The position numbers were made by a program, and so were the translations under genes. A stretch of DNA of 56,978 bases, the filler included, from Bipalium vagum (lineage: Eukaryota): the NCBI GenBank assembly GCA_037834085.1. It is 3 parts of 3 records of this genome, joined end to end, with 100 filler letters (N's around TTAATTAATTAA, not from the genome) between each part and the next. Parts side by side here need not be neighbours in the genome. Positions count along the whole stretch, not along the records: positions 19,982 to 40,815 come from JBBMKC010245682.1; 2 more parts are not named here. One strand, 5' to 3'. Below, piece by piece: positions 20,190 through 40,815 of the stretch. The notes under the pieces were generated by a model that was given only the letters and a program-made list of their open reading frames with translations, was not told the DNA's origin and searched no databases. Numbering within the stretch: position 1 is the stretch's first letter; every line of letters begins with the position of its first letter.

Positions 20190-23100
20190 GTAACAAATGT
20201 GATGAAGATATATTATTTTGTCAAACCTATATCGGTAAGGAGCATCCAAAAACAAAGAAATTATGGTTGTCCCTTCACGAGCTGTAAGTTACAACGAACA
20301 AATTAGAAATAATGTGTTAGACGGACTACAAATTGGGTAATTAAGTACTGAAAAAAAAAACAAAAACTAAGGCATAAAGTAGATACATTTATTTATTCAT
20401 TGATTTTTTAGTTATTGTTACGAAACCTAGCGTTTCAAGATTTTATGATTCTTCTTCATTTAATAACCGGTTCTTAGTTTTGTATATAGTATCAATATCT
20501 TCAGGTACATTTTTAAAGTAAGTCTTCTAAATTCAGTAAAAATAAATACGCTTCATATGGTGCCATCACAATTTTATCAATTATAATGTATCATCTTCCT
20601 TTATCAATGGTTCGAATAAAATCTTCATCGCTATGATCTATTGGATCATGTCCTGAAAGATCATTTTATTCTGAATTCTGGTTTTTCTTAATGATTTCAA
20701 GAAACAACCTTGAATGACGTTACTGAACATAAGGTCCCACGCTTGTAATGTTAAATGAGCACATCCACATTTAATCAATAAAAAAATTTTAATTTTATAA
20801 TAAGGGCTTTATAAAACATGGTATAAAATCTTTGCAAATTTATCTCACAACCCCTGTAAAAGTTTAACATTTTAAACAAACAAAAATATTCAGTGATACT
20901 TTAAATTCAAAAAATATTTTTCTATTTAAAACCTTTTTATAGTGCTTTTTAAATTATAACATTATTCCTTTATGAGGGAGCTGAATTTTCTAAGTGGTTT
21001 TGTCGATGGTAAAAATAATATTTCAATATTGGATATTATTTGTACCATTTAGATCAGATCTTGATCGCCTGTCAACTGAAACATTTTTCGTTCTTTCAAC
21101 AAATGATAACAGAGAACGTACATATTAAAATTATATTTCAATAAAAATAAAAATTATTTATATTTTTGATTCTACCTCATTATCAACAGCCCAATATATT
21201 TGCGTGATAGACAGAAAATACAAAACGATAAAGACTTGCCCAATCTTTTTGCAATATTACCCAAATAAATAATCTTTTTTCTTTTTTTAAATTTCTTCTT
21301 CTTAAACCCTTTTCATTGTTAATAACATTTTCCAAAAAACTTAATAATAAAAAAATAAAAAACTGTTATTATATATTGCGCTTTTTTCTTGATCAGATCT
21401 GAATAAAAAACTGTTAGATCAAAGAAGCTCTGCAAATAATTGCAGATAAATAATCAAATATCTTTTTTTTATTTTATGGATTCGTACATTAATTTAAGAG
21501 AGAAAGGATTATTAAATTTGTTTAAATTATTCTTTTCAGCTGAAAAAAGGTTTACTAATTTTCTCATCTTGAGAATCTGGCAGAATCACGACTGCTTCTC
21601 CGCCCGTGCAAAGTTTTCCTATTACACTTTCCATTGTTCTTCCCTCTGCAGCTGCAGCTGTCAAAAGATGCCCCGTTGTAAAGTATTTTCTGTGTCAATG
21701 TAATTATTTTTTTCCGATTTTTTACCAGAGAAAACTCAGAAAATGAAATCTTGCCTTTTTAATTTCATTAAAATCTTCCATGGAAATATGACCCGTTCAT
21801 TGAATGAAAATTTAAAACTTTTAACAAATTTTCTAAAGTTCAATCTTTAGGAAATTATTTTTTGTAATTTCCCTTTCTCTTTGGAAAATATCGGAAAATT
21901 GTTCCAGAAAGATCGGAGAAAATATTTCATTGTATACAGTTTAAAAATTTTTGTTTTAAAATTTCCAACTTAATTAATTGATTAATTAACTAATTATTTC
22001 TTAAATAACGGTCAGCTGACGTCCTTAAGAATCTCACTGGAAAGTACAGTAATTATTAAAAATATTTATTTTATTAAAATATACATAAATTTTTTTCCAA
22101 TTTTTTTATATGGTTTTTAGAATAATAAATTATTTTATTAATTATGATATTTAAATTTCACAATGCGATATCCTTTTTCAAAGACATATTAATTAATGGA
22201 ACAATCGCAAAGGGAAATGAAGCAACCTCCATTTATAACAATATCATTATAATTTAATATAATTTACTACAGTCGTTGCAACATTGAGAAAAAATTTATT
22301 ATTTTTTTATTCATAATTTATTTAATTTAATATTAATAAATCAGATTTTATTTTTATAAAATGTAAATTACGAAATTCGATGTTGAATTTAATACGTTAT
22401 TTTAGAAATATTAAAATAAACATTGAAAATGGTATAATTTTTAACATTTTCTGTATATTTTATTCATTTTAAAATCCCAATTAATGTTTAAAGAACATTA
22501 AGAAAAAAGAAAACAACTTTTTAAAAAAATTAATATTAATTGATTTTAATTATTATCATCTAATTTATATTGAATTAAAATATATTAGATATTATTATTT
22601 ATTATATATAATAGTATTTATTACATAATAATATTAGATAACCAAGAAAGTTCGTGACCATTTTACATTAATATATTACAAGTCAAATAATAAAACAAGA
22701 ATGTAACTATAATGAATTTAATGAATTAATGAATTAATTAAAATAATCAACCTCACAATCTTCCAAGAAGATAAAAGTTTATAAATCCCGTATTTATAAA
22801 ATTTAGAGTCTTTTGAAGTGAAAAAGTTGCCAACTTCCAATTCAATCTCTTTTCTAATTTTGAATTCCTTTTGTCTGAAATGATTGTCTATGGCCATAAA
22901 AAGATGGTAGTCAGTTGAAGAAATATCGGGAGAATATGGTGTATGTGACAGAATTTCCCAATTTAATGCAGATTTTTTGTGTGTGCTAGATGTTTCATCA
23001 TTTAAATTAAGAACTGTTGTCAAATCTTGGCATGATAAATTTGAATTCTCTTCAATAATTTCTTGCAACTCTCCGTCATTGATGTCTGAAGGTCTGTCGG

Positions 23101-24710
23101 AGAGTGGTGCTTCTTCGAGTGATTCATCTTTGCTGATTTTTGCAACTTACTTCTATGCTTTTCTTCGTTTCAAGGCATCATCTTCAAATGCTTGTCATAT
23201 CCTACGGCATGCCTCTGAAGCATTAGACACCAATTTGTACAGGTACAACATGTATTATCTGATTATCTTGGAATCAATCAACATTTCTTAATTTTTAAAA
23301 GCGGTCACAGATATATAGGAATAATAATGCAATATAAAATGTTTTTATGAAATAATAATTTTATTTAAAAATCGTTATAGTCATTTATATATCGTTATTC
23401 TATGTATATACAAAATGCGCACTAATTTTCTTGGTTACCTAATATATAATATTATTTATTATGTACTGATTTTTATAATATTTTTTATCATATATTGTTA
23501 TATAATATACACTGTTAATTTACTCAAATTCCATAAAAAAATCAATAATTAAAACAATATTAGTTATTGACTTTAATGAATTATTAAGATTATATAAAAT
23601 CTTCATAATTCCTTATATCCCCTTCAAAGATATCTCTTCAGCTTTTCCAAATTCTTTTCAATCTGCTTCACGTCTCTGTTCTTTTTTAGTTACTTCCTTC
23701 CCTATGTTTCGTATCCTATGTACATCGTTATCGGAATCTGTTTGGTTATGCCTGCCCAGGTCATCTCTCTTCTCCTTGCGGCTTATGCTGTTTTCGTTCC
23801 GCATTTATATTGGTGTTGTTTTTCTTTTCATATTTTCCAATTTTATTGTTAATTTTTCAATTTCCTCAACGGTCTTCATTTCGTGCATTTCAGTCTCTCT
23901 GCTGACATTGTCGTTGTTTATGCAATATAAAAGCATTCTGACAACTAACTCATCTTCTGTTAGCTGATGTGCCGTTCCTTTTTATCCTTCTGTTTGACCT
24001 GCTGAAAAAAAGTATGAATACTCTCTTAACCGCGTCTGTATTGTAGAAATTATTCACAATCTGTCATCACATCCTTTTCTTTTGCAACCAATAGACCTAA
24101 TTGAGCTTCAAATCCATCCGTCAAGTTTTCTGTTCTTTCATACTTCTCTATCATGTCTTCTTCTATCATAGAATAAATAAGAGCTTCGCGCATTTATTTG
24201 GGCATCTTCAAAAAATCGAAACAATTTTAATTTATTTTTTTACTGAATTATAAGATTATATAAAATTTTCATAATTCGTAATGTACTTTATTATATATAA
24301 TATTATTTATCATATAATATTATTTTTTACATTATTTTATTTTTTATCTTTTATTATATATTTACATATTATAAATATTATAGACTTTATTTTGAAATTT
24401 ATTTACCAGTGTTTTTTTCCAGTGCATCATAAGTCCCTGTTACAAATTAAAATTGGACAATTACCTTGAAACCAGGAATTTCTTACATGCTCATTTCGAT
24501 CACCTGGGAGAAAATACAATGTTTTCTTGCTACGTTAATGAATATTTAACAAATGAAGTTTTGCTATATAAATTCTATTCCTATTCCACGTACATCTCAT
24601 GCATCCTGGGGCCCATTATTCTCATTGCTATATCCATCCTCATTCTGATTCTGTGCTACTGGATCGACAGGTGCAAAATATGGGCCAACGATAAAGCAAT
24701 AATTACATAG
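20190..24710 (+). CDS. BK-channel beta-subunit / TipE-like (KCNMB/CaKB-like) protein: extracellular loop and TM2 exons
   Basis: Exons 20190-20283 (xNKCDEDILFCQTYIGKEHPKTKKLWLSLHE), 20321-20336 (LRTTNW) and 24423-24710 (CIISPCYKLKLDNY...FSCYVNEYLTNEVLLYKFYSYSTYISCILGPIILIAISILILILCYW...*). Phases match. The pattern parallels KCNMB C-x-Q-V-Y-V...HQLLTNPK-CSYIPPC...FSCY...VILTKLY...LFWP-TM2. Confidence 0.7.
21010..22285 (-). pseudogene. Degenerate multi-exon gene fragment antisense within the KCNMB-like intron
   Basis: Minus-strand blocks with host-like codon bias (KYFTTGHLLTAAAAEGRTMESVIGKLCTGGEAVVILPDSQDEKI; RFLRTSADRYLRNN; TQIYWAVDNE then GT) separated by AT-rich spacers; they could not be joined without stops or frameshifts. 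Confidence 0.4.
22634..23442 (-). mobile_element. Internally deleted mariner
   Basis: TA-flanked TIRs (TTAGATAACCAAGAAAGTT / AATTTTCTTGGTTACCTAA); LNWEILSHTPYSPDISSTDYHLF; central transposase region missing. Confidence 0.9.
23600..24230 (-). mobile_element. Non-LTR retrotransposon (LINE) remnant
   Basis: GC-enriched minus-strand fragment with RRREMTWAG, similar to the R..W.GH..R motif at LINE ORF2 ends; degraded. Confidence 0.4.
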
Positions 24711-26384
24711 ACAAATGATCATAGACGTTTCATATGAGAACGTTTGAATGTAGAATTTTCATTGCAATGTAAATAAAAAATGTTAAAGCTTTATTTAATC
24801 TAAATATATATTCTAATTAACCTAATTTTATTTTATTTATTATTTAAATTTAATACGTGAATTAAAATCTTCATTAAATCAAAAAGTATTATTAAATTTA
24901 TTTTAATTTAATTTATTTTGAAAATTTTTAATATTTTGTCTTTTATATAAAATTTTGTTAATAATATTTTTATTTAATAATTATAATATTTAGTAAATAT
25001 ATTTTTCTTTGGTTTGACATTTTCGATTCTCAAATTTTGTTCAGATTTAATATTTGGTTTCAGGATTTTTGATAATTTTTCTACAGAATTATTTTGTTTC
25101 CACAATGGTCACAGCTTTAAGGAGAAATTGCTAAGAATCTTTTAGGAAGAATAATCAATTGCTTTTTGGTTCAAAATACAGTTCAAGATCTTACAAAATC
25201 CTCAAATTTTTCTAAGTTCAATACAATACAAATATGTCTCCATAAAGGTAACTAATGTGAAAAACAAAAAATAAGAAATAAAATCCCATATGATATGATT
25301 TTTGATCATATTTATCAGGAAAATTGAAAGTTTTTAAAAATTTGTTTTTTCATCACAACTTAATAATTAAAACAAATATCTTAAATCTCACAAAAACCTT
25401 CCAGATATATAAAAAGGAGAAAGAAACGAAAATGACTAAAATATTTTATTTAATTTATCATTACCGTAAAAGCTAACGTATAATACGCAGACTACATTTA
25501 AACCTTGAAATTGAGGGAAATTAAATATTCGCATATGATACGGAGCCCAATTTTTTAAAAATAAAAAGGTTAAATAATTTTTTTATTCTTGAGATTTTAA
25601 CTTGTCTTATAAACAAACCACGTATTTTATGAAAATACAGACAATTAACAAGTCAGTAAGACTTCTTCGTCTTCAGAGCTTCTAGAAAGAAGAACTCTAA
25701 AATTATCCTCTTCAGTATCTTCTTTCTTTCCATCATAGTAATTATTTTTTGATATCATATGCATTGATATTCGTGTTCTTGATGTTCTTGATGTTGTTTT
25801 TGGTTTTGTAAAGTCAATATTACTTTTTAGAAATTATTCTCAATCTGATTAGTTAAGTAAAAAAATAATATTTTGTTCATTATCAAAATTAAGGACTACG
25901 TTTACCTTGACTCCTAATTGTTCTACGACTCAAGTTCAGTTGTACAAAAACTCAAAGTATTATACGTAGTCCGGGATTCAAGATCGGGTCATTTGATAGA
26001 TTTATGGGATATGATTTGTCGTTGTAATCTGATTTTGTATGTAAAACTTTGGTTGGAATAAAATTTTCACGAACTTTAGTTAACTGTATTTTAATATTTT
26101 AATACTTTAATGATTTATGTGCATTAATAAAATTATATAAGTCGAAAATGTTAATGATTGAGTGTTAAAATAATTGATTAACAAGAATTTTTATTTTATT
26201 TTTATTAGTCAATAATATGAAATTGATAAGTCACACGAGTATAATAAATACTCAACAGTGTTTTTAATTCCAAAGATCAAAAGTCAAACAGCAATTGGTA
26301 GTAACCACCAGAAATATGTAAACTTAAAACAAGAGCACATCAACTTTGTCATTAATCAACTCGAGACCAGTTAGAATAATAATT

Positions 26385-26552
26385 ATTATTCCTGGAAGTC
26401 TTCCAATTTTTTCAATATCTTCATAGTATTTTATCGATCTTCTAAAGTTTGAAGCAGCAATTCTGAGTCTTTTTGCAGTATCACAATTTTGATATCATTG
26501 TTTGTTTAAGACATCAATCGTTTCTTACTGTGTAGTCATTGATAACTAGTAA
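26385..26552 (-). mobile_element. Tc1 transposase N-terminal (HTH) remnant
   Basis: Minus strand reads MTTQ*ETIDVLNKQ*YQNCDTAKRLRIAASNFRRSIKYYEDIEKIGRLPG. Confidence 0.6.
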
Positions 26553-27594
26553 TAATTTTAATCTGAAAATTATTTACAGATTCATCATCAATTAAATAAA
26601 CATAATTCAAATTTTACCTAGAAAAAAAATAAAATTAGCGTGGTAAAACAAAATTAATTTGGTTATCAAATTTTTCTGGTAACCTTTAATAATAATAATA
26701 ATACTTCGAAAATGAGATTTTGTTTATAAAAAATATATTACTAATGATAAAATCATTGTTTGCTTTTTTCAAACGGTTTTAAGTTATAGAGTTTGATCTC
26801 ACTGCAAAATTTAAAACGTACACCAAATTACGTCAGGTGACCCTCTATGAATTTGCAAAGTGTACGTATTAGATCTAAACCTAAATTTCACTTTTTAATC
26901 TTTTCCAAACCGGTTTTTACTTGATAGTTTTATCATTCAAGCATCTTCAAAATCTTCTTTGGAAATTGACTTCTGTATTATCGGTTGGAATACTTTCTTT
27001 TCTAAATTTTGTAAAATGAAATTTAGTCCAACTACGATAATATCGACATCTCTGTTTTCATTGATATATTTGCAATCTACGGAAAAGAACGAAAGTCATA
27101 GAAACAAAGAGGAAAGAAACTTGAAAATTGATAAATATTGAAATGAAAATCTAATAAGTTAATATAATCACTAATGAATTTAATTATGTCAATTTTCCCC
27201 CCATTTTTACGATAATCTAATAAATTGACTCTAGCTGCTGCTTGTTCATTAACGAATATTGCTCTAGGTCTAATTAATATTTTTAATTTTTAGATTGTCA
27301 TTCATAAATAGGAAGGGGTGAAAATATTAATTAAATAAAATCAGTAATCTTTTATCTCTCCGGATTCAGACAATTCGTGAAATTATTATTTGCTCATTTA
27401 ATATCTCCAAAAGCTGTTTAGAAGCATTAGTTAATGTATCCTGACGGTTGCCGTTAAAACAGGCAATAGTTTGAGAAAATATTTTTTACCCAGAGTCCAT
27501 TTAATAAGGGAAAATGATATCATCAAGAAGAAATGAAAAAAAGCGAAAATATTAGTTAAGGTTAAATATAAAACACTTTATAAATTTAAATATA

Positions 27595-27980
27595 CAGGGT
27601 ATCATAAAAATGTATCTACAATTTAAATATAAATCGTTAAGTAATTAAAAGTCCTTATTACTTGTTTTATAGTTTGTTTAAATACTCCAATAACTGGTAA
27701 GAAATTACCGCTATTTTAAATCTATAAATTTATACTTAAAGGATGAATCATGAAAAGTAGGTTGAACTTTTAGCATAAAAAAATTTATTATCAAAAATTA
27801 CTTCTAGTTTGAAAACATAAAAATACAGACCCTTTTCAATAAAGAATTTTAGATAGATCCTCCAACAAGACTGACAATCAGTCGAATAAAGAATAAAGTT
27901 GAAAAAGATGGAACTATCAATGTCAACAGAAACCGTTCTAGAAGTTCTAGGTGTGTATATATCTTTTTTGAGACACCCTG
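27595..27980 (+). mobile_element. Non-autonomous Tc1-like element (DUF4817-type HTH)
   Basis: TA-flanked imperfect TIRs CAGGGTATCATAAAAATGTATCTACA / TGTATATATCTTTTTTGAGACACCCTG; internal DPPTRLTISRIKNKVEKDGT. Confidence 0.8.
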
Positions 27981-28080
27981 TATATATAAAGTTTGTTTAA
28001 ATAGTAAATCTTTATATAATTTTGAGATGTTCAATTTACTATTATGAACTTCCATTATGAAGCATGTGTATGGATTAAAT

Positions 28081-28390
28081 ATCACTTTAAGTGGAGCTCT
28101 TCACATTTTTCAGGCTGACGAAACATTGATAAATAAACGAAAATACAATAGAAAATACAAGAGATCCAGTTAGTATGCGACTTGCACACATCCATCATTA
28201 TCGCAAAGATACTTTATTTATGACTAATGGATGGCGAGCATAGCGGAATATTACAGTTAATCATTCAGAAAACTCTGTGGATCCTCAAACAGGAGCCCAT
28301 ACAAAATTAATTGAAAATTTGTGGATGAGGCTCAAGCATTTTATAAGATCTAATTCTTATAGAAATAGATAAAAATTGGATGAGTAAATT
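28081..28390 (+). mobile_element. Merlin (IS1016/ISXO2-like) transposase remnant
   Basis: IFQADETLINKRKYNR...FMTNGWRA*...TVNHSENSVDPQTGAHTKLIENLWMRLK matches Merlin motifs (DE..KRKYNRG; TVNHS..FVDP.TGAHT..IE..W). Confidence 0.9.
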
Positions 28391-29119
28391 TTTATATTTG
28401 GTTCGAAAATTTAAAGACTCTGATATTGGATCAATTAATTAAAATAATCACCATATAAAATTATGAAAATCAATTATAAAAAAGTGTCCTAAAGTTTAAA
28501 GTCTTTTTTAACCTTAACAAAATATTTTAGGAGGAACGTCTGTGAATATAGAGATATTTGAAAATGAATGTCAATGTCAATGAGGATAAACCCTAATGAA
28601 CCGAATATAATCTCAAAACAAAAGAAACCCGGGACTTTCCATCATCATACCAAAGAGATGTTTGTATTATTTAAAAAATCAACGGTAAAATATTGTTACA
28701 CAAATCGGGGTTGATGTATGATCACTCGTTACATTCAATTTTAATTATTTATTTTCTAGATTTGTCTAAGAGTCAGATAATTAAATTTAAGAATAAATTT
28801 TTCTAAGTGGCATTATTTTTTATATTTGAAATTTTAGTCTGAAAAGAAAATAAAATTTTTATCTGTGTTTTACAATTGCATGTCGCGATAAATAATTGAA
28901 ATGAAAGTTTTTTGTTAATTTCTTTTATTTTTGTGAAAAAAGTGTTAATTTTAAAATCTTGTTATCATTTCGTCGTTGTTCTCTATCATATTTGCCGAGA
29001 ATGTGAATTTTGTGAAAAATTTAATTGAAAACTGTTATGAATTTAATTTTTCTTGCTTGTAATTAATCGAATTTTTATAATTGCTTATTAATGGTTTTAA
29101 ACCTTTTTAAAAAAATTTA

Positions 29120-30287
29120 TAAGGTTGTAACAGTTTGTCGCTTTTTTATAAAACTGTCTTTTAACATTAAAAGTTATAAAAATCTTTAATAAACATATAG
29201 ACATCTATGCGTTGTTTAAACATATCAATTGAAAATATTATCGATTAAATATTTTAAAATTTAGATTTTTTAATATTTTTTTAAAATGGAAAAAAATAAA
29301 ATGCATTTTAGGAATCTTATATTATTTTATTACCGTAAAGGTAAAAGTGATTTCGAGACAGTGAAGAAGATTTGCTCTGTCTATGGAAATGATTCAGTTT
29401 GCATTTCAAAGCACTTCCCGTATGAGGTTTTTGCTGTTCAAAACCGGGATGTTTGAGTTGGAAGATAGAGAGCGCTGTAGTAGTCCTCCTTTAGAAAAAG
29501 GTGACTTCTAGTATCAGTAATTGAAAAAGATTCCATTCGAAAACAAGATCAATCACAGAAAGACTCAAGATATCTAATGTGAGTGTGTCAAGGTATTTGA
29601 AGACACTGGGGTACATCAATCGTCTTGATCTTTGGATACACCATCAATTGATTGAGAAGCAATTAATGGCTCGTGTTTCAATTTTTAGTTCCTTATAAGA
29701 AACAAATCCGACCCGTTTTTGAAAAGAACAATTACTGGCGTCAAAATGGTTGTTTTTAATGATCCGAGACGTAAAAGGTCCTGGTCAAAATCAAATTAGC
29801 CTCCAAAAACCATTGTAAAAGCTGTATTACATTCAAAGAAAACCCTTCTTTGCACTTGGTGAGATTGGACGGGTATAATATATTACGAACTCCTTCCATA
29901 ATGTCAGACGTTAAATTCCATCAAATATTTTTCTCGGAAGGCTATTATTTTCCACCAAGATAACGCCCAATCTTGTGTCTTTTATGACAGCAGAAAATCG
30001 CAGAGTTTTGTTGAAAGGAACTAGCACTTTCCGATTTTCATTTATTCAGATTCCTACAAAATTTTCTTGCTCTAAAAATTTTCAAAAAATCAGGGACTGC
30101 AAAAACGAACTGAAGTGATACATAGCTCAAAAAAATTCTGGAGGATGGGTTGATGAAGCTTCCTCAAATATGCCTAAATGTTGAGAAACAGAATGGTACA
30201 CATTTGACCGATTAAATAAATGTATAAATTTCTTTATTTTGTGTTTGATTTTTAGAAATAAAACGATACGAACTTGTTACAACCTAA
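29120..30287 (+). mobile_element. Near full-length degraded mariner
   Basis: TIRs TAAGGTTGTAACAG / CTTGTTACAACCTAA-TA; MEKNKMHFRNLILFYYRKGK, LDLWIHHQL, LHSKKTLLCTW, IFHQDNAQ; many stops and frameshifts. Confidence 0.9.
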
Positions 30288-30320
30288 TATATTATAAGAT
30301 TGAAACCTTGAAATTTACAT

Positions 30321-31190
30321 CAAAAGGTGAACACACTAAAATCAGGACACAAAAGTCATTGTTTAAGAAAGACTAAAATCATCTTTTTATTTCACAACAA
30401 TGCATAAATTACATTACATAAAAACTAAAAAAATTAGATGAAATATTAATAGGCTACTGAGCGGACTTTCCATCTGATTGATCTCATTATCATTTGGTAA
30501 GGTACTTTATTATTGTGTTTTGAAGCCCATTTCCTCAATTGAAACTTTCCGGCCTTCTGGATCTTCTGACCGGTTTTCTTTAGTATTCCTTTCACAAGTG
30601 ACCAATATTTCTCAATAGATTGAAGTTCTGGATTAATAGATGGATTAAAATCTTTATGAACAAAATTGACTTGTTTGTCATGGTACCGTTTTATTGTTAT
30701 TTGTGTAGTGACAACTTGTGAGGTCTCGTCAAAACAAAGGTTTCAATTGATTTTTTCTTATATAAGACTACACTCTCTTTTGCAAGCATTCATCAACATA
30801 TATGTGGCTATTTAATATTCCCGCTATCACGTACCCTTCACTCTTCAGAGCACATAAATATATCGCCTACCAAACCATATTCTTTTGAAAATTTTGACTT
30901 TACCTTCTTTTTGCATTCTTCAAGGGTATTCTTTAGTGTTCTAGCTGTATAAAAAACTTGACCAGTAATATATTTTTTGTACAAATACATTTCATCATCC
31001 AAACACATTGTGCAGAATTAATTTACTTTCTAATTCCTTAGACAATAAACTTCAAATATTATTTTATTCATCTATTTATTTACCATCTATTTATTTTATT
31101 TACCATGATTTTAAATTTCTATTTTTTTAAAATTAATTTTTAAAAAAAGAGCAGTTGAAAGTGTGTTCAAATTGTGGTGTGTTCACTTTT
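30321..31190 (-). mobile_element. DD37E-like (ITmD37E-type) Tc1/mariner remnant
   Basis: Imperfect TIRs AAAAGGTGAACACACTAAAAT / ATTGTGGTGTGTTCACTTTT; minus-strand LKPLF*RDLTSCHY and NFVHKDFNPSINPELQSIEKYWSLVK, similar to FWPDLASCHY...NPPN.PELRPIEKYW. Confidence 0.7.
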
Positions 31191-32269
31191 TAAATGGACT
31201 AAGGTACTCATAATTCTAATATTAAATAATTAATAATCAAAATAATTAATAATTAAAAAAATAAATAAATAATGAATTTGATAATTATACTTTGGTTTGA
31301 TTTTAATGTGTTTTTAGTTTCAGTTATTATTTATTTATTAAATTATTCTTTTTCCAAATAATATTATATTAAATTTTTGTCAAAATTAATCATTTACAAA
31401 ATATATATTGCTGATATAAAATTGAGGATTTATTTGACTAATGGAGTAAATCTCCTTAGTCCAATTCATCACCTAAATTCATAATTATGTTTTGAGTATT
31501 ATTATTATCTGTAATAGGATATAAAACTGCTCTCTAAAATGCATTAGGATGCTTAACCAAATGATCTAACTCTAAATGATGAATATAATTTATCCTGTAT
31601 TATCTTAAGCTCTCTTTTCAATATAAAAGGTAACCTTGGAAATAATTTTCATTTAACTAAATATTTATAGTTCATTTATAGATCCTATCCTTCTTCGGGA
31701 GTCCTTTATTGAAAGCTAGGTATATTATAAAAAAATTACTTCAAGTGCAGCCACAAAGTACTGATATTGATTATTCTTCATTATTATTTATGTTAATGTT
31801 ATGTTATTATTTACTTTAATATTTATGAACTACTTTTCGTTATCGGAAGAAGACCAAATAGTTGTAATTTATTAAATTTTATTTGAAAAATTACTGAAAT
31901 TCTTAATTCAATTAATAATTCCAAATTTTCTAAAATCTCGACATTATGTATTTTTGGGTTCAGAGAATATATACTGATAAAACGTTAGAAGTTTAACTAC
32001 CAACAGTGAATAGAATGTCACAGTCTGTTTGTCTTAAGTCATCTTTGAAACAAAAGCTTTTCTATTGTCTTCACAATAATTCATGACAGCAGCATCTCAT
32101 AAGTAGAACCTTTTGATACCCATCATAAAAAATGTATCGGCATCTCCTTTGTAAGTTGAAAAGGTGTAGCAGAATTCGGTGTACTTATTGCGAAAAGGAT
32201 GGAAAGGTGTTTAATGTTTTATCATAAATTTTCTGATATTAAAGTGATTATCTTAAAATAATCAATATA

Positions 32270-32271
<2 letters not shown>

Positions 32272-32315
<44 letters not shown>
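32272..32315. repeat. (AAT)n microsatellite
   Basis: Perfect AAT run. Confidence 0.9.
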
Positions 32316-32317
<2 letters not shown>

Positions 32318-32329
32318 AGGACTTGTATA

Positions 32330-32690
32330 AACCCTATAAAAAGTTATAGGGTAAATTTTATTCAGCATAAGACTGCTAATTTTGAATATCTTCCAGGTCT
32401 TGAATATCTTTCGATATTTTTCCATATAATGTCTTCAAATGTATCCAAAGGAAAAAATAAACCTGGCTTATTTCGCATATTTTCCATCTTCAAACTTCCA
32501 AAGATCACAAATTCTTCCAATCTCTTTGAATTTTGCAAGTATCTTCCTCATTATCCTCGCGAAACACATCTTTTCCCATTTCAAGAGTGCAAATGTTACT
32601 TATTCGAGCTTAGCTATCAGTCAAGAAATTTGCACTTTTTCTTCAATGGATACTTATTAAAGGAATTAAACACTCATTAAATTTCAAAAA
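32330..32690 (-). mobile_element. Tc1-like (DUF4817-type) 5' remnant
   Basis: Minus strand reads VSIEEKVQIS*LIAKLE*VT...RKILAKFKEIGRICDL. Confidence 0.55.
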
Positions 32691-32738
32691 TCTTATTTCA
32701 TAGAAAAATGTAAATTGAGTACATTTAATTATTATGTA

Positions 32739-33103
32739 CAAGGTGTCCCAAAAGTCAGTGGTGATTTGAATGTTTTATAATTTTTTGAAAATTTGATTTA
32801 ATTGAAATTTCTTTACATTTATATGATAATCGATCTTTAAAGTTTTATTAAGACTTAAAAAATTTCAGGTAAAATGAGTTTTTGTTTTAATATTTCATTT
32901 AATATGGTAGGTATGCTAAGTGAAGACACCAACATTAAAATAGTCATCTTAATGGCGAAATGGCAATCTCAAACCAAGGTGAGTCTGGAAATAATTCGAG
33001 TCTGGAAACCATTGCGAAGGTGTATAAGAAATTTTTGCAACATGGAACTGCCCATGATTTGCCAAGGATTGGTCGACCAAGAAATGATGTCAGCAATGAT
33101 GTA
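32739..33103 (+). mobile_element. Tc1-like (DUF4817-type) element 5' part, interrupted by a mariner
   Basis: TA plus CAAGGTGTCCCAAAAGT terminus; MLSEDTNIKIVILMAK...SLETIAKVYKKFLQHGTAHDLPRIGRPR. Confidence 0.8.
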
Positions 33104-33105
33104 TA

Positions 33106-34392
33106 CACCCTCCATTCCAAAAATAACCGAACTTTAAAAAAAGGCAATCAATATTTATTTTGAAAAAACAATTTTTATTAATCAATTTAATCGCCTTCTG
33201 CATTGATACACAAATTTGCACGAACTAACAAGTTGTCAAACGACTTCTCTATGTCCTTTTTGATGATGGTCTTTAGGACATCGGTCACTGTAATTTTGAT
33301 GGCCTCAACCGACTCGTGAAGTTTTTCTTTGATCGTCGAATGAAGCTTGGGGAACAGATAGTAGTTGCACGAAGCGAGATCAGATGAATATAGTGAATGT
33401 TGCAAAGCAATAATCTGATTCTTGATCAAAAATTTAGTCTCAACTCTTGAATGATGTGATGGTGCATTATCGTCCTAAAGGGTCCAACTGCCGGTTTCTC
33501 GATATTCTGGTTGAACACGACGAATTCTTGCCAGCAATCGCTTCATGACATCTAAATAAAAGTCTCCTGTGATTGTTTGGCCGGCTGGAACAAGCTCTTT
33601 GTGGATAATTCCTTTGGAATCGTAAAAGAAAATCAGCAAAACCTTCACTTTTGATTTTTCCAAATGAGATTTTTTCTGTTTTCCCTCATCCGGCGATCTC
33701 CATTCAGCACTCTGCCGCTTTGTTTCGGGTTCATACCTGAAACATCACGTGCCGTCACCGGTAAAAATCGTTTTCAAGAAGTTTGGGTCCTTCCGAGCAC
33801 TTTTAATGATGTCTTTGCTATGATCAGTTCGAGCAATTTTTTGGTTTTCGGTGAGTTTATATGGAGCAAACCGCGAATTAGCCTTACGAAAACAAAATAC
33901 CTCATTCAAAATGTGGTATGCAGTTGTTTGACGAATGCCTAATTCCATTTCAATCAATTTCACCGATTTTTTATTATTTTTGGTAAATTAACGCATTTTT
34001 TCAATGTTATCTTTTTTGGACGGCCTGGTCTTTCGTTGTCATTCATGGTTTCCCTACCCGATTCGAATCGCTTGAACCACTCGTATACTTGCGTACGAGA
34101 TAGACATTCATCACCATACGCAGATTGTAGCATTTGATGGGTTTCGGTAAAAGATTTATCAAGTTTAACGCAGAAGTCAATTGCAGCTCTTTGTTTGAAA
34201 TTCATTTTCTAACCGAAATATTAAACAGACTAACAAAAACGTAGGAATTACTCACGTTGTTTATATCCTAATGTCATGAAATTTTTATCGATTGTCAATG
34301 AATGATCACGTTACTAGTGGTATAATGTTAAAGTAAATGGCGCTTGTAGTACTATTTTTTTAAAAATTCTGTTATTTTTGGAATGGAGGGTG
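33106..34392 (-). mobile_element. Full-length (1287 bp) mariner with frameshifted transposase
   Basis: TA target-site duplication; 30-bp TIRs CACCCTCCATTCCAAAAATAACCGAACTTT with 2 mismatches; transposase 34205 to 33187 in four ORF pieces (MNFKQRAAIDFCVK, RFAPYKL, IFTGDG, DDNAPSH, YSSDLASCNYYLFPKL). Confidence 0.95.
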
Positions 34393-34987
34393 TATTGTTG
34401 AGCTCCAAATTCTGATACTTTATATTGGATTGAGGAATAATTTCGTGCCGTTTATTTTTGAATTTTTATAAATCTCTAATTATTTGGTTTAAAATTAAGT
34501 TTGTTTAAATAATTAATAAATATTTAAATTTCAAGGTACTTAATGAATATTACTTAAACATGTAATTTTATAACGATTAGAAAATAAACATCCAAGTCGA
34601 CAAATATAAAAAACATTATTGATTTAAAGTTTCAAGTATAAGTATCAAAAATAAAAAATTAAAATATGATAAAATAAAATAATCACAAAACAGAGTAGAT
34701 ATCACATTTTTAGTAATCTGGACAAAAGATCGTTCTTCTTCAAAAATAGAAAAATAAAACAAGTAGACCATTTTATCTTAATTAATTTTTTATTTATTAC
34801 AATATTTCATAAAAAGCATAAAACATGAATAACAAAATAACTTGTAATAAGTCAGAATAAATTAATAAATTGGAATAAAAACTTTTCAAAACAGGTGTAA
34901 AAGAAAGACAATAGATAATAACAACAAAAATAGTGCTTAGTTACAAGTAAAGTATAATGAAGAAATTTCTGTTACAAAGATTATGAG

Positions 34988-35430
34988 TAGGGCACGGATT
35001 TTTATGACCTAAAAAAACAGAAATATGACCAAAATAATACAGAAATATGACATTCACAAAAAATATAACCTATTGAATTTTGACAAAATTACATCTCAAA
35101 TTACCAATTATTATAGTTTAAGAACGAAATAAAAATCAAACAAAGTATGATGTAAAATTTTATTCATTAAGCGCTTATGAATTATTGCAATAAATTACGA
35201 AAATCATAATTTATGAGAAAGAGTTATGTTTTTTACGTTGTTAAAATGGTAACTTCGTTCCATAAATATTGATGCTTGCTGTTTAAATTGGACTGTTCAT
35301 ACAAATGTTATTTGGAGCTTGTTTTTGGCTAAATACTTCTGGTGGTCATTTTTGAAATATTAATTGTTTATAACGTGAACTGTGAAGACAATCAATTATG
35401 TAGATGATAAATATAAAATATAAAAATATT
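34988..35430 (-). mobile_element. hAT-related (CGGBP1-like) transposon end remnant
   Basis: Terminus TAGGGCACGGATTTTTATGACCTAAAA with subterminal AAATATGAC repeats; degraded C-terminal motif QAP...ERS...MIFVIYCN on the minus strand. Confidence 0.5.
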
Positions 35431-35749
35431 ATCCATGATGACTATCTTTAAAACTTTCATCTTTGTTTTTTGAATTCATCCTAAATACGAATAATAAATA
35501 TTTAATGCTAAGAGGAAGCCTAAGTGCTCGGATTTTATTTGAAAAAAACGTAAAATACTTGTTTGTATTAACCTTTCTTGTCGAATCTTTCAAATCATAA
35601 TTTGTCAAAACGGCTTTCTTATGAGATTTTTAACGAAAAATTTCGTTTGTTGAAACACAAAACACATCTCTTCAAATAACGCAGTTATATCTTGTGTAAA
35701 ATATTTTTATACTACGACATATATAAAATATATATACAAATTTACTGAG

Positions 35750-36060
35750 ATTGTGGAGCAAGGCAGACTCAATAATGTTTAACGTTGAGTTCCTGTAAAC
35801 AACTGGGAAGGCAGTCATTAACATGGAAACTTCATCATTATGCAGGACAACGCTCGCCCTCATGTAGCCAAATTAGTCGATTCCTTCTTGGAACAAAACA
35901 CACAATCACCTTACTGTCCCGATATGAACCTGATAAATCGCTTCCAAACTTTAGAATACAGAAATCAATAAACAAAGTCCTTAACTGGTATTTGGGATAG
36001 AAGACAACACTTGGGCTGAGACGTGAGCTGAACCGATTAAGAGACGTTAAGAACGGTATC
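35750..36060 (+). mobile_element. Tc1/mariner catalytic-domain fragment
   Basis: HGNFIIMQDNARPHVAKLVDSFLEQ...SPYCPDMN. Confidence 0.8.
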
Positions 36061-36304
36061 ATTTTGTGTCTATTTTTTTTTAATCGACTGGGTATTTAAA
36101 TGTTTGTTCTAATAAAAATCAAATCAGACTGATTAAAACACTCAAATGGTAGATAACACTTTAAAAATAAAAATTATTCACCATGACAAATCAAGACACA
36201 ATATTAATTTTATAAATTTGTATATTTTAACTTTGTTGAACAAATAAACAAAATTAAATTATTATATTGATAAATCCCGGAGAGATAAGGTTTTATGAAG
36301 GATT

Positions 36305-36390
36305 TTAGAATGCTCTTCGCTAACCTAGCCTCAAGAGCCCTCAATAGAAACAAGCGCCTCTCCGCCCTACTGGACGTAGAGAAGGCAATA
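36305..36390 (+). mobile_element. LINE reverse-transcriptase fragment
   Basis: ANLASRALNRNKRLSALLDVEKA (LDVEKAFD motif of non-LTR RT), strongly GC-enriched. Confidence 0.7.
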
Positions 36391-37443
36391 AAAGAGAAAA
36401 GATGGAAAATAACAAAAAAGTTCTTATTTTGATAATGATAGAATAATTGGGGAACTATCCAATTATCCTATCCAGATTATTTTTAAGATTTTATGAATTA
36501 ATTAGCAATCAAAATATTCAATTTGTAATCAAATTTTTATTTATGATTGACTTAAAAAAATAAAAAATAATTACTAGTAAATACACTTGGGTTCTGAAAA
36601 GCTGGACGAAATTCTCTGAACTGATAACTGTTAAAAATAATGTTCTTCTCAATATTCCTAAATCGGAATATGAATGAAATATTTGTTCAAGAATATCTTC
36701 AAATTTGATGTTTCGATTCTTGACTTGAATTCTTCCTTTGACTTTCTTTTTATTATTCTAGGATCGGAATATAATTGAGCCTATTTTCTCTGGAATATCT
36801 TCTCAAAAATTGATGCTTCGGCTCTCAATTTGAATTCGTTGTTTTATCTTCTTTCTTCAATTCTGCTTGAAATTGATTGCTTTTATTCTAGTTTGGATTT
36901 AATATGACACTCTCCTATCAGAACCAATTTGATTTTTTGCAAATAAATTTCCTTTTGTCAATTGCAAGAATATCTGCTTACACTCTAATTTGATTTCCTG
37001 TCTTCTACACAGCAATTAGATATAAATTGTTTGGTGTCTCTAATCAAAAATTTTTTTGATTTATATTAATATGTTCAACCTCTTTTTATTTATAGCAATA
37101 TAAATTTACCATATTTATTTTTATATAAATTTTTAGTTATTCATTTCTTTATTTAGTTGGTATTTTTATTTTTAGTAATTATTCTTATCGTTATTTCTAA
37201 ATTTATAATTATTTTAATTTATTTGTTATTTTTGTGAATATTATTTATATTTTATTAATTTATTTATTTTTCTCGGGATATATCAATTATTTACACATAC
37301 ACATAAATTTTTTATCAAAAAACATGCATAATGTTTTGTAAAGAATTTACATAATAAAAGATTAAAGGATCACTGGATTTACAACATTGAATTAAAGTTT
37401 TGTACAAAATGTTAAATGATTTGCATCACAAAACAATGTTAAG

Positions 37444-37576
37444 TTTTTAATAATTTTTTCGATCATTTCCCTTCTGCTTCCTTGCCTGGGAGTAGTCTCC
37501 ACAACTATAGTAAATCCTGAAATTGTAAAAAAATATCGAAAGACTTTCTGCACAATCTCATACAATTTGTGTTGGG
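37444..37576 (+). CDS. TM1 exon of the KCNMB/TipE-like gene (out of order, or first exon of a tandem copy)
   Basis: FLIIFSIISLLLPCLGVVSTTIVNPEIVKKYRKTFCTISYNLCW-G followed by donor GTACCT at 37577. Hydrophobic helix then Y-x-K-T-x-C-T-I, like KCNMB TM1 plus first Cys. The phase-1 end joins exon 20190 (G+GT) in frame. Start unresolved: ATG 37324 (MHN) plus intron 37333-37443, or a 1-nt frameshift near 37444. Confidence 0.6.
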
Positions 37577-39862
37577 GTACCTTATTTTACTGATACAAGA
37601 AAATATTTAATTGAATTAATTTTTGTCTCAATAATTTTAAGAATAAATATGAACGAACGAATACTCAGACAAATACTAAAATAATAATATGTAAATTCTG
37701 CGTAAAAAATATTCTCTTTTTCTTTTTTATTTATAATTTTCTGAATATAATTTTTATTGTATTGAATTTTGATTTTATTTTGTCTTTATATATCAAAGCT
37801 CACTTTGAAATTTGATTGTGTGCGCTACAAAATCTGAATTTGACAATTGTTCAATAAAAACTGAAATGATAAATAATGAATTTTGATGAATCTTTCAATG
37901 AAACAAATCATCTCACTTCAAAATTGGAGAACTGAAAGAAAAGTGATAATACTTATAAATATGAAAATAATATTGCTAGAACATATTTCGTTAAGGTTGC
38001 TTTGCTAGGTCTACTACACCGTGATGATAAGAGCCAGTCACACATCAAATATCACAATACAAAATATAAACAACCTTCTGATGATCACCCTAGCTTATCT
38101 AAATAACAAATATAAATAGTTTAGATTTTTATGCCGATCAATAACATTTACCATCATTATTGACAACAAATGGAAGTTGTCAAAGACTTAATCACGAACT
38201 ATGACATGCTGGAAATATTCTACGAAATTGATGAAGACAATAGCGGTTCTTTATTGTTTCATTCGTTTTCGATATTAATTATTCCGTAAAGGCATCATCA
38301 CAAAGGATACTCTTCAGAAACATTTATATTATAAAAACTTCAGTGATGGTGATATAAAAGTGAAATAAAGTGTATTATAAAATAACCTTTTTACTATTAT
38401 TAACAAGGATTGGATGAGCTTGTTTGACAGATTCGGTTCAGACAGAATAAACTTGGACATCTTCTGTTCCATAATTATGGTTGATCCAAAACGATGGTAA
38501 CTTTTCTTTATTTCAGTTATACGTAGTTGTAAAAATTGAAAATATATTTTATAATTTTTTCTGTTTTCGCTCAAATAAGATATTAAAATTTTTTATGACA
38601 ATTTTATTCTTAATAAATTTTGTATATATTAATTAAGCATGAATTAATTATTTATGAACAAAAATAGTATATCTTGATATATTGTATAAAACATAAATAG
38701 ATAAAATCAATTTATAAAGTGAAATTATTAAAAAGGCTTGTATGGTAATTTTATTTAAAGAAAAATCTCATTTTTGAAGTTTTATTATTATTATATATAT
38801 TTTGTTTTAAAATTATTTTAATTATTTTAATTATTTTAATTATTTTTATTTTATTATTATTTTATTATTATTAATATTATTATTATTTATAAAAACATTA
38901 TTCTATATATTAATATTAAAATGTATTTTTTTCAGAGTTTCGCTATAAATATATGAATGAAAATAATCATTTAAAATTATGGAAAAAAATAATCTCCTAT
39001 ATTTCCATATTTAAATTTTATTCACAATAAAATCAGAAATTTTTTTATTAATACCAAGATTGTATAAAAATGTTTTTTTAAATATTTAAATATTCTATTT
39101 ACTCAAAATATGTTAATAGTAAAATTTATTTAAAGAGACTTAAAAAATTATTCTTCAATAAATTCTGAAATTTAAAGTTTTACATAAAAATCAATATTAA
39201 TTATCATATTTTATATCACATATTTAAAATAATAAATAAATTATGATTATTTATGATTATTGATCTATTTAAGACTTGGTTTATTTTTAAGACTTGGTCT
39301 TATTATCATATTTCAGCCTTTGACATATACATTTGTTAAATATGACTTATTAAAATAAATTTATTAATTTAAGTCGATGTATTGATTTTAAAAAAAGATT
39401 TTAAAGCGATTTTTTTATTAAACAAATAATATTTTTAAATTTTAAAATAATATTTAAAAAAATTAATAACTCATTGTGCCATTAAACAATATATGGATAT
39501 TGATATTATTTGTGTCACTTATCAAATCTCAAATCAATGTTTAATAAAATAATTTAAAATAAATAAATAAATATTTGTATAAATATAAATAATTTGATGC
39601 ATAATAAAATAAATATGTAATGTATAACAAATAATTTTCAAGGTTGAGAAACCAATAATGACATTATTTTTTGTGTATTTTTATATTTCTTATTTTTAAA
39701 GGTATTAATTGATTAAATATCAGTAATTAAATCTTTATCTTTAATTATTATTTCTTATAACTGAAATCACGGTACAAGCTTATGGAGGTACAATCTGTAC
39801 TTCTTTCAAAAATATATTTCTGTGAAATTGACCAAGACTCTTCGGCTCTGCTTAGTTTGGAG

Positions 39863-40137
39863 CAGTGGCATTCAACCTTTTTTAGCCTAACGCCCACTTT
39901 GCTACATTCCTATCTATAAAAATATCTATCGCCCATCCAAAATTTTAAAAACTTATTAAAATCCAAATAATGTTTATTGACAAAAGAGAATGCAATATCT
40001 ACAACTGGTATAGTAGTTGAAAGAGTTATCGAGACCCCTGTGCTTGATGTTTCAATGCCAAGGACTTCTTCCTAACGCCCACCTAATATTTCAAAATGCC
40101 CACTAGCGGGCGATATCGCCCAGGTTGGAGGTCACTG
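39863..40137. mobile_element. hAT (Buster/Charlie-type) MITE
   Basis: Imperfect TIRs CAGTGGCATTCAACCT / AGGTTGGAGGTCACTG; 8-bp target-site duplication GTTTGGAG / GTTTAGAG (7 of 8 match); subterminal CGCCCA repeats. Confidence 0.85.
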
Positions 40138-40815
40138 GTTTAGAGGCTTACCTTTCATTCCTTTTCATGATGTAATGATTGACGCAATGACATAATCTGG
40201 ACTGAATTTCTATTCAACTGTTTATTCATCTGACATAGGTTTTCCTTATAGGCTTTTTTTATACATCGTCAGAAATTGGTTCCTGACTCAGATGCAATTT
40301 ATAAATTGTCCCTCTACTTATGTATGTGGATTGTGGTAGTAGAATTTTTTTCTTGTCTGAGTTCTCAATACTTTATACTGTTGTAAATAAAACTTGTTCT
40401 CAACATTATTGAGTTCACAATGATGTCTTCTATTATCATTTTATAACTAAGTAATTTTGGCTTACATTTTGATTATTATATATGCATCTTAAATTAGGTC
40501 ATGTGAAAAGTTCAGATCGATTTTAGAAAAAAATTTAAAATATTAAAATTATAAATTTATAAAATGAAAGGTCCTCAGATAAACTAATGAAAACCACATC
40601 AAAAATTTTTTTAATACCTTTGACTAAATTCACTTCGTTTTTGACCCATTTGTTTTATTTATTACAAAACTACCAGTTTCCCTCATTAACATGAAAAGTA
40701 AATTTTTATTAAAAGAATAGAATAATCGGATTGATAGTTAGTCAAAGAACATTTTGAAGTGATCATTTAACCAGGTTTTCAGTTCACAAGTTCCAGTTGA
40801 AAATGAAATAATAAT

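What the first reader, a model, noticed from the sequence alone, without database searches (positions are those of the whole stretch)
20190..37576. Permuted exon order: the TM1 exon of a 2-TM channel-subunit gene lies about 13 kb downstream of its other exons
Seen in sequence: exons for the loop, TM2 and stop are at 20190-24710, and a TM1-plus-first-Cys exon is at 37444-37576 on the same strand. There is no gap between them (contig 19982-40815). The downstream exon ends in phase 1 and the 20190 exon starts in phase 1. Joining them gives a continuous 176-codon frame (...KTFCTISYNLCW-G-NKCDEDILFCQTY...) of KCNMB-like size and topology. I found no other TM1 exon upstream of 20190 and no second copy of the later exons after 37576. 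Inference, most likely first: a tandem duplication whose unit is captured as a circularly permuted contig with the other halves lost in the linkers; a misassembly; or a genuinely scrambled gene needing trans- or back-splicing.
Basis: partly seen in the sequence, partly recalled or inferred. Interest (0 to 1): 0.75.

Follow-up and report, generated by a model that had tools for sequence, protein, structure and literature searches.

The report
BK-beta gene cut by contig edge
This contig holds the real last exon of a flatworm potassium-channel helper gene, but the claimed out-of-order first exon is unproven, so this is most likely an ordinary gene cut off by a short contig.

Summary
Their phases fit, and exon-by-exon arithmetic gives 176 codons. 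Only the last exon (24410/24423-24710) is demonstrably a BK-channel beta (CaKB) exon: 69.8 bits, E 1.9e-20 against a flatworm family profile.

In other flatworms the whole N-terminal half, from Met through TM1 and four Cys, is one exon. This held in 18 of 18 single-ORF fragments. It is also the better conserved half in 23 of 23 held-out members.

No such exon is on the piece. Relatives as diverged as this last exon score 88.6-115.3 bits.

TM-plus-Cys frames are common on this T-rich strand: 6 by a broad rule.

The gene's real 5' exon most likely lies off the contig, which starts 208 bp before the first candidate exon. The downstream frame is then either a chance ORF or the head of a neighbouring copy.

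No RNA or read test was possible. The scan judged a similar "permuted" case elsewhere in this genome to be neighbouring genes. Interest is low.

The parts
24423..24710 (+). Last coding exon of a flatworm-type BK-channel beta (CaKB) gene. It encodes the second half of the extracellular loop (Cys of CIISPC and FSCY), TM2 (ILGPIILIAISILILILCYWI), a short tail and the stop TAG at 24708-24710. The start at 24423 is the family's conserved phase-0 acceptor (ccag|TGC).
   Evidence: 69.8 bits, E 1.9e-20 against the profile of 24 schistosomatid proteins, profile positions 170-261 of 262. 68.1 bits against the C-half profile. Pfam CaKB E 9e-5. phmmer found 9 relatives at E<=0.001, and every named one is a flatworm. 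In relatives, exon-2 fragments begin right after a Q or K codon (= AG) before the Cys.
24410..24422 (+). 13 nt between two tandem AG acceptors (24408-09 and 24421-22). Which one is used is unknown.
   Evidence: Read from the sequence; frame arithmetic. No RNA evidence.
20190..20283 (+). Candidate loop exon (NKCDEDILFCQTYIGKEHPKTKKLWLSLHE), unverified. The acceptor is cgcag| and the donor is |gtaagt. It lies 208 nt from the contig start.
   Evidence: For: N-K-C..D..F-C lands on the family's invariant N78 K79 C80 D83 F87 C89. Against: -2.0 bits against the N-half profile; hhalign E 0.048 over 3 columns; the same NKC-x(5-9)-C pattern recurs at 30215 and appears in 22% of simulated sequences; its frame is open for another 40 codons upstream.
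37444..37576 (+). Candidate TM1 exon (FLIIFSIISLLLPCLGVVSTTIV, then ...TFC...LCW), unverified. It is either a chance ORF or the head of a neighbouring copy. It lies 3239 nt from the contig end.
   Evidence: For: it is the only frame on either strand that meets a strict rule, which 2 of 200 simulated sequences also met; G+C is 33.8% against about 21-23% around it. Against: -0.5 bits; rank 52 of 1012 ORFs; hhalign E 0.28; no in-frame ATG; weak splice sites; also open on the minus strand for 64 codons.
24711..37443 (.). 12.7-kb spacer with no family exon. It is mostly transposon debris.
   Evidence: Profile scans of all six frames found nothing better than 8.2 bits, E 0.19. A mariner with 40-nt inverted ends sits at 33103-34395 (I6); its N-terminal ORF matches HTH_48 at E 7.1e-11.

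Best explanation
An ordinary two-TM BK-channel beta-subunit gene of a flatworm is cut by the start of a short contig.

Shown: 24423-24710 is its last exon. It encodes the loop half with three conserved Cys, TM2 and the stop.

Inferred: the N-terminal part, which in relatives is one well-conserved exon (Met, TM1, four Cys), lies upstream of 19982 and off the piece. The TM1-like frame at 37444-37576 is therefore not that gene's missing exon moved downstream.

I split what the frame is as follows:
- About 35%: the first exon of a neighbouring head-to-tail copy whose later exons lie beyond 40815.

In both cases no unusual splicing is needed. By homology (not tested here), the protein would bind the Slo1 pore subunit, as vertebrate beta subunits do in solved complexes.
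For: - The last exon scores 69.8 bits, E 1.9e-20, against the family profile.
- Relatives are all flatworm proteins that pass Pfam CaKB at 37.6-64.8 bits. The family profile matches human beta4 chain 6v22_E at E 3e-13.
- 18 of 18 Logan/ENA single-ORF fragments hold TM1 through CxNKCSK in one frame. The fragments then run into a V codon (= GT) just before the Cys of CATSxC: 16 of 18 by a strict pattern and the other 2 by eye. So relatives have two coding exons, and their single intron maps to 24422|24423.
- In 23 of 23 held-out members the N-half scores above the C-half. The 12 members with C-half scores of 63.0-75.0 bits have N-half scores of 88.6-115.3 bits. Here the values are 68.1 for the C-half against -0.5 and -2.0 for the two candidate exons.
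- An N-half profile of 87 sequences, run over 1012 scored ORFs of the piece, gave 8.2 bits at best. tblastn with the 87 N-halves gave E 0.082 at best.
- A broad TM-plus-Cys-plus-GT rule finds 6 frames on the + strand. Simulated sequences average 0.8.
- The first candidate exon is 208 nt from the contig start, and this gene's known intron is 4.1 kb.
I did not check it.
Against: - The three frames together give exactly the family's Cys series in the right order, and the two short frames abut within one residue in the CxNKC motif.
- The strict rule is met only by the 37444 frame, and by 2 of 200 simulated sequences. That rule was written after seeing the frame.
- The short frames are richer in G+C than their surroundings.
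- All profiles come from parasitic flatworms (Neodermata). If this animal is a free-living flatworm, its N-half may be more diverged and may hold extra introns.
- Paralogues in Schistosoma mekongi are not adjacent: locus tags 004242 and 004398 lie on one chromosome and 002077 on another. Head-to-tail pairs are therefore not shown for flatworms.
- No read or RNA data were seen.
Confidence: 0.8

Rival explanations
1. There is one gene, or a near-identical tandem pair. The contig is a rotated view of the repeat unit, either a collapsed tandem duplication or a wrong join in the transposon-rich spacer. In the real genome 37444-37576 would then sit upstream of 20190, across an intron of at least 3.4 kb.
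For: - Both contig ends would fall in the same intron, so a single break in low-complexity DNA would be enough.
- The ends are very AT-rich.
- The spacer holds several mariner-type fragments that could mislead an assembler.
- The Cys series is complete across the three frames.
Against: - It needs the two short frames to be real exons, and the homology tests do not support that.
- The contig ends share no exact overlap of 10 nt or more.
- No copy of any exon is repeated on the piece.
- It needs a new intron inside an exon that is unbroken in 18 of 18 relatives.
Confidence: 0.1
2. The short frames are relics. The locus would be a decaying or rearranged copy whose N-terminal exon was broken up and partly moved, while the last exon still looks intact.
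For: - The N-half pieces are far more diverged than the last exon.
- The 37444 frame lacks a start. Two upstream ATGs (37409, 37436) are one base out of frame across a run of five T.
- The donor at 20283 does not fit the conserved acceptor at 24423.
- The 4.1-kb intron and the spacer are full of transposon pieces.
Against: - The last exon keeps 99 open codons in DNA where about 1 codon in 12 is a stop. It also keeps most invariant residues. Uneven decay of this kind would be odd.
- Placing the 5' piece downstream on the same strand needs at least three breaks.
Confidence: 0.06
3. The gene is truly scrambled. The 5' exon lies 12.7 kb downstream of the 3' exons, and the mRNA is made by trans-splicing of two transcripts or by splicing of a read-through or circular precursor.
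For: - Phases match (1 and 1), and the joined frame stays open.
- Flatworms have a trans-splicing machinery for spliced leaders. Passages seen in PMC12582326 say that leaders in parasitic flatworms end in AUG.
Against: - No transcript evidence of any kind.
- The short frames are not shown to be exons.
- The contig edges give a simpler account.
- Spliced-leader addition is not exon-to-exon trans-splicing.
- Such genes are extremely rare in animals (recalled).
Confidence: 0.02

Closest known systems
Flatworm 'calcium-activated potassium channel subunit (beta-2)' proteins, e.g. Schistosoma japonicum TNN08463.1 (P0024) and the Schistosoma spindale protein P0001
   Same: The last exon aligns over loop half, TM2 and tail (42% identity to P0001, 53.4 bits). 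It keeps C122, S125, C127, N134, F151, C153, Y154, D199, C201 and W204 (numbering of P0007). The acceptor sits at the family's intron position.
   Different: No counterpart of the conserved N-terminal exon (YLxCAT..ECILxHL..KCENKCSKDRS) is on the piece. Several invariant residues differ (T124I, H128Y, W180G), as read.
Vertebrate BK beta subunits KCNMB4 and KCNMB2 (PDB 6v22_E, 9czh_E)
   Same: Same Pfam family, CaKB, by way of the flatworm profile: E 3e-13 and 3.8e-13. Two-TM plan with a Cys-rich outer loop.
   Different: Only distant similarity. This exon alone stays under the Pfam cut-off (22.7 against 25.1 bits). Binding to Slo1 is inferred, not tested.
Insect TipE/Teh gene cluster (Li, Waterhouse and Zdobnov 2011, PMC3240667; abstract seen)
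   Same: A related two-TM auxiliary-subunit family whose members sit side by side in a conserved cluster. This is a precedent for a neighbouring copy.
   Different: Arthropod sodium-channel partners, not flatworm genes. No clustering was shown for flatworm members, and the S. mekongi paralogues are not adjacent.
The earlier 'permuted exons' case in this same genome (note s1-751382, NIT-guanylyl cyclase)
   Same: The tail of one gene is followed by the head of another on a short contig of a fragmented assembly, so the exons look swapped.
   Different: That note is an unchecked AI report on other DNA. Here even the identity of the 'head' exon is unproven.

Membership tests
CaKB / KCNMB (Pfam PF03185), flatworm branch | Significant profile match | tested here: met
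   Last exon only. It scores 69.8 bits, E 1.9e-20, against the profile of 24 schistosomatid proteins. Those proteins pass PF03185 at 37.6-64.8 bits. The direct Pfam hit is 22.7 bits, under the 25.1 cut-off.
CaKB / KCNMB (Pfam PF03185), flatworm branch | Conserved N-terminal exon: TM1 with YLxCAT..ECILxHL, then C62, C76-E-N-K-C80-S-K-D-R-S, F87, C89 | tested here: not met
   The best of 1012 scored ORFs on the piece reached 8.2 bits, E 0.19. The 37444 frame scored -0.5 bits and the 20190 frame -2.0 bits, against 88.6-281.4 bits in 23 of 23 held-out members. Not met on this piece; the exon may lie off the contig.
CaKB / KCNMB (Pfam PF03185), flatworm branch | Two TM helices around a Cys-rich outer loop | tested here: inconclusive
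   TM2 and three loop Cys are in the last exon. TM1 and four Cys are supplied only by the two unverified frames.
CaKB / KCNMB (Pfam PF03185), flatworm branch | Association with the Slo1 pore subunit | not testable with these tools
   Needs co-expression and electrophysiology or binding assays.
Scrambled or trans-spliced gene | A mature RNA that joins the exons in canonical order | not testable with these tools
Scrambled or trans-spliced gene | Both parts are proven exons of one gene | tested here: not met
   Only the last exon is supported.
Scrambled or trans-spliced gene | No colinear copy in the genome | not testable with these tools
Head-to-tail tandem pair cut by contig ends | A second set of later exons downstream of 40815 and a first exon upstream of 19982 | not testable with these tools
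   Both would lie off the piece. Within the piece there is no second copy of any exon.

The most novel reading that the evidence does not exclude
The two short frames are real, and this flatworm's BK-beta gene has its TM1 exon downstream of its other exons in the true genome. A working mRNA would then need exon-to-exon trans-splicing or splicing of a read-through or circular precursor. That would happen in a phylum that already runs spliced-leader trans-splicing.
Probability: 0.02. Interest if true: 0.75.

Novelty: not a real feature. Interest (0 to 1): 0.1.

Why it matters
If the permuted order were real and expressed, it would be a rare animal case of a gene that needs non-colinear splicing. 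As it stands, the finding is a caution. On short contigs of a 26% G+C genome, short hydrophobic Cys-bearing frames are common, and a reader can easily assemble them into a plausible protein.

Two by-products may help annotators:
- In the relatives seen, flatworm BK-beta genes have two coding exons with one phase-0 intron just before the Cys of CATSxC.
- Their N-terminal half is the better conserved half, so it is the right probe for finding the missing exon in this assembly.

Tried and rejected
Steps that gave nothing:
- Word search with the last exon: 1 candidate, none scored. The search only sees proteins of 0.55-1.75 times the query length.
- Second copies of the three peptides on the piece: none. 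Long direct repeats or an overlap of the contig ends: none.
- Pfam on the minus-strand frame over 37395-37586 and on four other frames: nothing useful.
- Rfam and tRNA scans of 22545-40815: nothing.
- The bacterial promoter/terminator scan near 37444 does not apply to an animal genome, and I give it no weight.

Ideas considered:
- A spliced leader ending in AUG could supply the start at the 37443|37444 acceptor. Passages seen in PMC12582326 show this AUG for parasitic flatworms. For planarians I only recall it. Untested here.
- The 4-nt GGTA shared at both junction sides could be a target-site or microhomology mark. Splice consensus alone explains most of it, so I dropped the idea.
- A short minus-strand match to the family motif at 24184-24207 is a 13-codon frame inside a decayed insert. 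I treat it as chance and use it as a control.

Literature:
- A search for 'BK channel' + 'beta subunit' + 'Schistosoma' listed 3 papers. The one I opened, PMC6881696, holds the terms only in its reference list.
- I found no paper on flatworm BK-beta gene structure with that one search, and I make no wider claim.
- Supplements were not opened.

Step left out: I built no joined model, so there was no joined search, fold or junction-string search.


Full report
**What is on the piece**

- 37444-37576 is 44 codons plus one base.
- 20190-20283 is two bases, 30 codons and two bases.
- 24410-24710 is one base, VFFQ, 95 codons and a stop.

The sum is 176 codons. I counted this and built no joined sequence.

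Each peptide has only its own match on the piece by tblastn. There are no long direct repeats, and the contig ends share no exact overlap of 10 nt or more.

**The last exon is real**

- Pfam CaKB matches it at E 9e-5 and 22.7 bits, just under the 25.1 cut-off.
- The word search found nothing.
- The full HMMER scan found 9 proteins at E<=0.001. The best was 53.4 bits at 42% identity.
- Every named relative is a flatworm: Schistosoma, Trichobilharzia, Heterobilharzia, Protopolystoma, Dibothriocephalus. Some are annotated as calcium-activated potassium channel subunits.
- A profile of 24 of these proteins scores the frame 24396-24707 at 69.8 bits, E 1.9e-20. The next best of 1150 open frames has E 1.4.
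- The relatives pass Pfam CaKB at 37.6-64.8 bits. Their profile matches human beta4 (6v22_E, E 3e-13) and beta2.

So the animal is a flatworm, as earlier notes on this genome also say, and the gene is a BK-beta relative.

**Gene structure in relatives**

A profile search gave 76 proteins at E<=0.001 among 3413 candidates. Among them are 18 Logan or ENA products that look like single genomic open frames.
- All 18 carry the CxNKCSK motif with 65-117 residues upstream in the same frame. That stretch runs from Met through TM1 and the Cys motif.
- 16 of 18 match a strict pattern for the conserved tail followed by V. The other two (P0093, P0098) show a variant tail by eye.
- The V is the GT of a donor read through. 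It falls just before the Cys of CATSxC.
- Fragments that hold only the second half begin after a Q or K codon, which is an AG.

I infer that these genes have two coding exons and one phase-0 intron. That the products are unspliced frames is itself an inference from their sources and their non-homologous tails.

In the window this intron maps to 24422|24423 (ccag|TGC). It also needs a new intron inside what is a single exon elsewhere.

**Do the two short frames look like that exon?**

They do not, by any test I could run.
- Pfam: no hit at E<=10.
- Family profile: -1.2 and -0.1 bits.
- hhalign: E 0.28 over 13 columns and E 0.048 over 3 columns. Each alignment does land at the expected place in the profile.
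- An N-half profile of 87 sequences scored 1012 frames. The best was 8.2 bits, E 0.19, at 25121-25252. The 37420-37590 frame ranked 52nd, and the two frames covering 20190-20283 ranked 218th and 481st.
- tblastn with the 87 N-halves gave 276 weak matches, the best at E 0.082, and none among the listed bins at either frame.

The calibration is the key result. I trained half-profiles on 19 schistosomatid proteins and tested them on 23 others.
- The N-half scored above the C-half in 23 of 23.
- The 12 members whose C-half scores 63.0-75.0 bits have N-halves of 88.6-115.3 bits.
- The window's last exon scores 68.1 bits, while the two short frames score -0.5 and -2.0.

A typical member this diverged would carry an N-terminal exon that is easy to detect. 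No such exon is on the piece.

**What speaks for the short frames**

- A fragment alignment puts NKCDED on the invariant ENKCSKD.
- Read, the 20190 frame keeps N78, K79, C80, D83, F87 and C89.
- The 37444 frame offers a 23-residue hydrophobic stretch, a Pro just after it, and two Cys.
- Together the three frames supply the family's Cys series once each, and the two short frames meet within one residue inside the CxNKC motif.
- They are richer in G+C (33.8% and 34.0%) than their surroundings.
- A strict rule is met once on the + strand, by this frame, never on the minus strand, and in 2 of 200 simulated sequences. The rule is a TM-like 19-mer, then two Cys, then a phase-1 GT.

**Controls that weaken this support**

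- The strict rule was written after seeing the frame.
- A broad rule (TM-like 19-mer, one Cys within 30 residues, a GT soon after) finds 6 frames on the + strand and 0 on the minus strand. Simulated sequences average 0.8, and 51% have at least one.
- NKC followed by Cys after 5-9 residues occurs twice on the piece, at 20192 and 30215, and in 22% of simulated sequences.
- A closer copy of the Cys motif sits on the wrong strand at 24184-24207 in a 13-codon frame.
- The 37444 frame has no in-frame ATG and is open only from 37420. The two nearby ATGs are one base out of frame across a run of five T.
- Its splice sites are weak, and the same stretch is open on the minus strand for 64 codons.

**Reading**

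The gene whose last exon is at 24423-24710 most likely has its conserved first coding exon upstream of 19982. The contig begins only 4.4 kb before the last exon, and this locus already shows a 4.1-kb gap between candidate exons.

The 37444 frame is then either a chance frame (my estimate about 45%) or the head of a neighbouring copy (about 35%). The neighbour reading needs the N-half of this lineage to be unusually diverged and to hold an extra intron.

I cannot separate these two readings. Clustering of related genes is known for the insect TipE family (abstract of PMC3240667). For flatworms I saw the opposite hint: the three Schistosoma mekongi paralogues carry locus tags 004242, 004398 and 002077, so they are not adjacent.

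The remaining possibilities are a collapsed duplication or wrong join (about 10%), relic pieces of a decaying copy (about 6%) and a truly scrambled gene (about 2%).

**What could not be done**

- The run search found one holder, X1, of unknown kind and not on record as RNA.
There is therefore no read, depth or junction evidence.
- Only this piece of the assembly was available, so the obvious test could not be run. That test is to scan the other contigs with the N-half profile.

**Rest of the piece**

The spacer and the introns are mostly transposon debris. Rfam and tRNA scans of 22545-40815 found nothing.

**Verdict**

The frames exist as described, but the permuted gene is not shown. The simplest account is a contig-edge effect combined with exon hunting in AT-rich DNA. 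The underlying gene is a new member of a known family. Interest is low.

Noticed in passing
window 33103-34395 (minus strand): A mariner-type element of about 1.3 kb with 40-nt inverted ends, 93% complementary (I6). Its N-terminal ORF at 33960-34205 matches HTH_48 of the Mos1 transposase at E 7.1e-11. The reading frame is broken into several ORFs.
   Followed up: partly
window 38170-38247, 38291-38362, 38408-38497 (+): Three short frames separated by 43 and 45 nt read like an EF-hand pair with its own ATG. Only the first frame gives a weak Pfam hit: EF-hand_8, E 0.0023, 18.1 bits, under the 28 cut-off. It may be a small gene or a pseudogene between the TM1-like frame and the contig end.
   Followed up: partly
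proteins P0070-P0105 (relatives): In the relatives seen, flatworm BK-beta genes have two coding exons with one phase-0 intron just before the Cys of CATSxC. 18 of 18 single-ORF fragments hold the whole N-terminal half in one frame.
   Followed up: yes
proteins: In this family the N-terminal half (TM1 plus the first four Cys) is better conserved than the C-terminal half in 23 of 23 held-out members. TM1 carries invariant E40, C41 and H45. That is unusual for a membrane helix and may mark a contact with the channel.
   Followed up: partly
window 29290-30200 (+), 22718-23068 (-), 35822-35968 (+): By eye, these are further decayed mariner or Tc1-like transposase fragments with many stops. Pfam gave no hit for the two that were scanned.
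   Followed up: partly
window 36289-36429 (+): This frame holds an LLDVEKA-type stretch that I recall as a reverse-transcriptase motif of LINEs. It was not scanned.
   Followed up: no
window about 23580-24290: An insert in the 20283-24410 gap is flanked by near-identical direct repeats of about 35 nt (read by eye; the neighbouring family D1 is). It has broken minus-strand frames. It is probably a decayed mobile element.
   Followed up: no
window 24184-24207 (minus strand): A 13-codon frame begins with an 8-residue match to the family's Cys motif (7.4 bits, E 0.29) and drew 97 of the 276 weak tblastn matches. I take it as chance. It is a useful control for motif-level arguments.
   Followed up: yes
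window 39870-40140: A stretch richer in G+C with internal repeats of an ACGCCCAC-like word. By eye it looks like a SINE or MITE. No tRNA or Rfam hit.
   Followed up: partly
window 37409-37450: Two ATGs (37409, 37436) open a frame that stops at 37448-37450. That frame is one base out of register with the TM1-like frame across a run of five T. This could be a real frameshift or a homopolymer length error in the assembly.
   Followed up: partly
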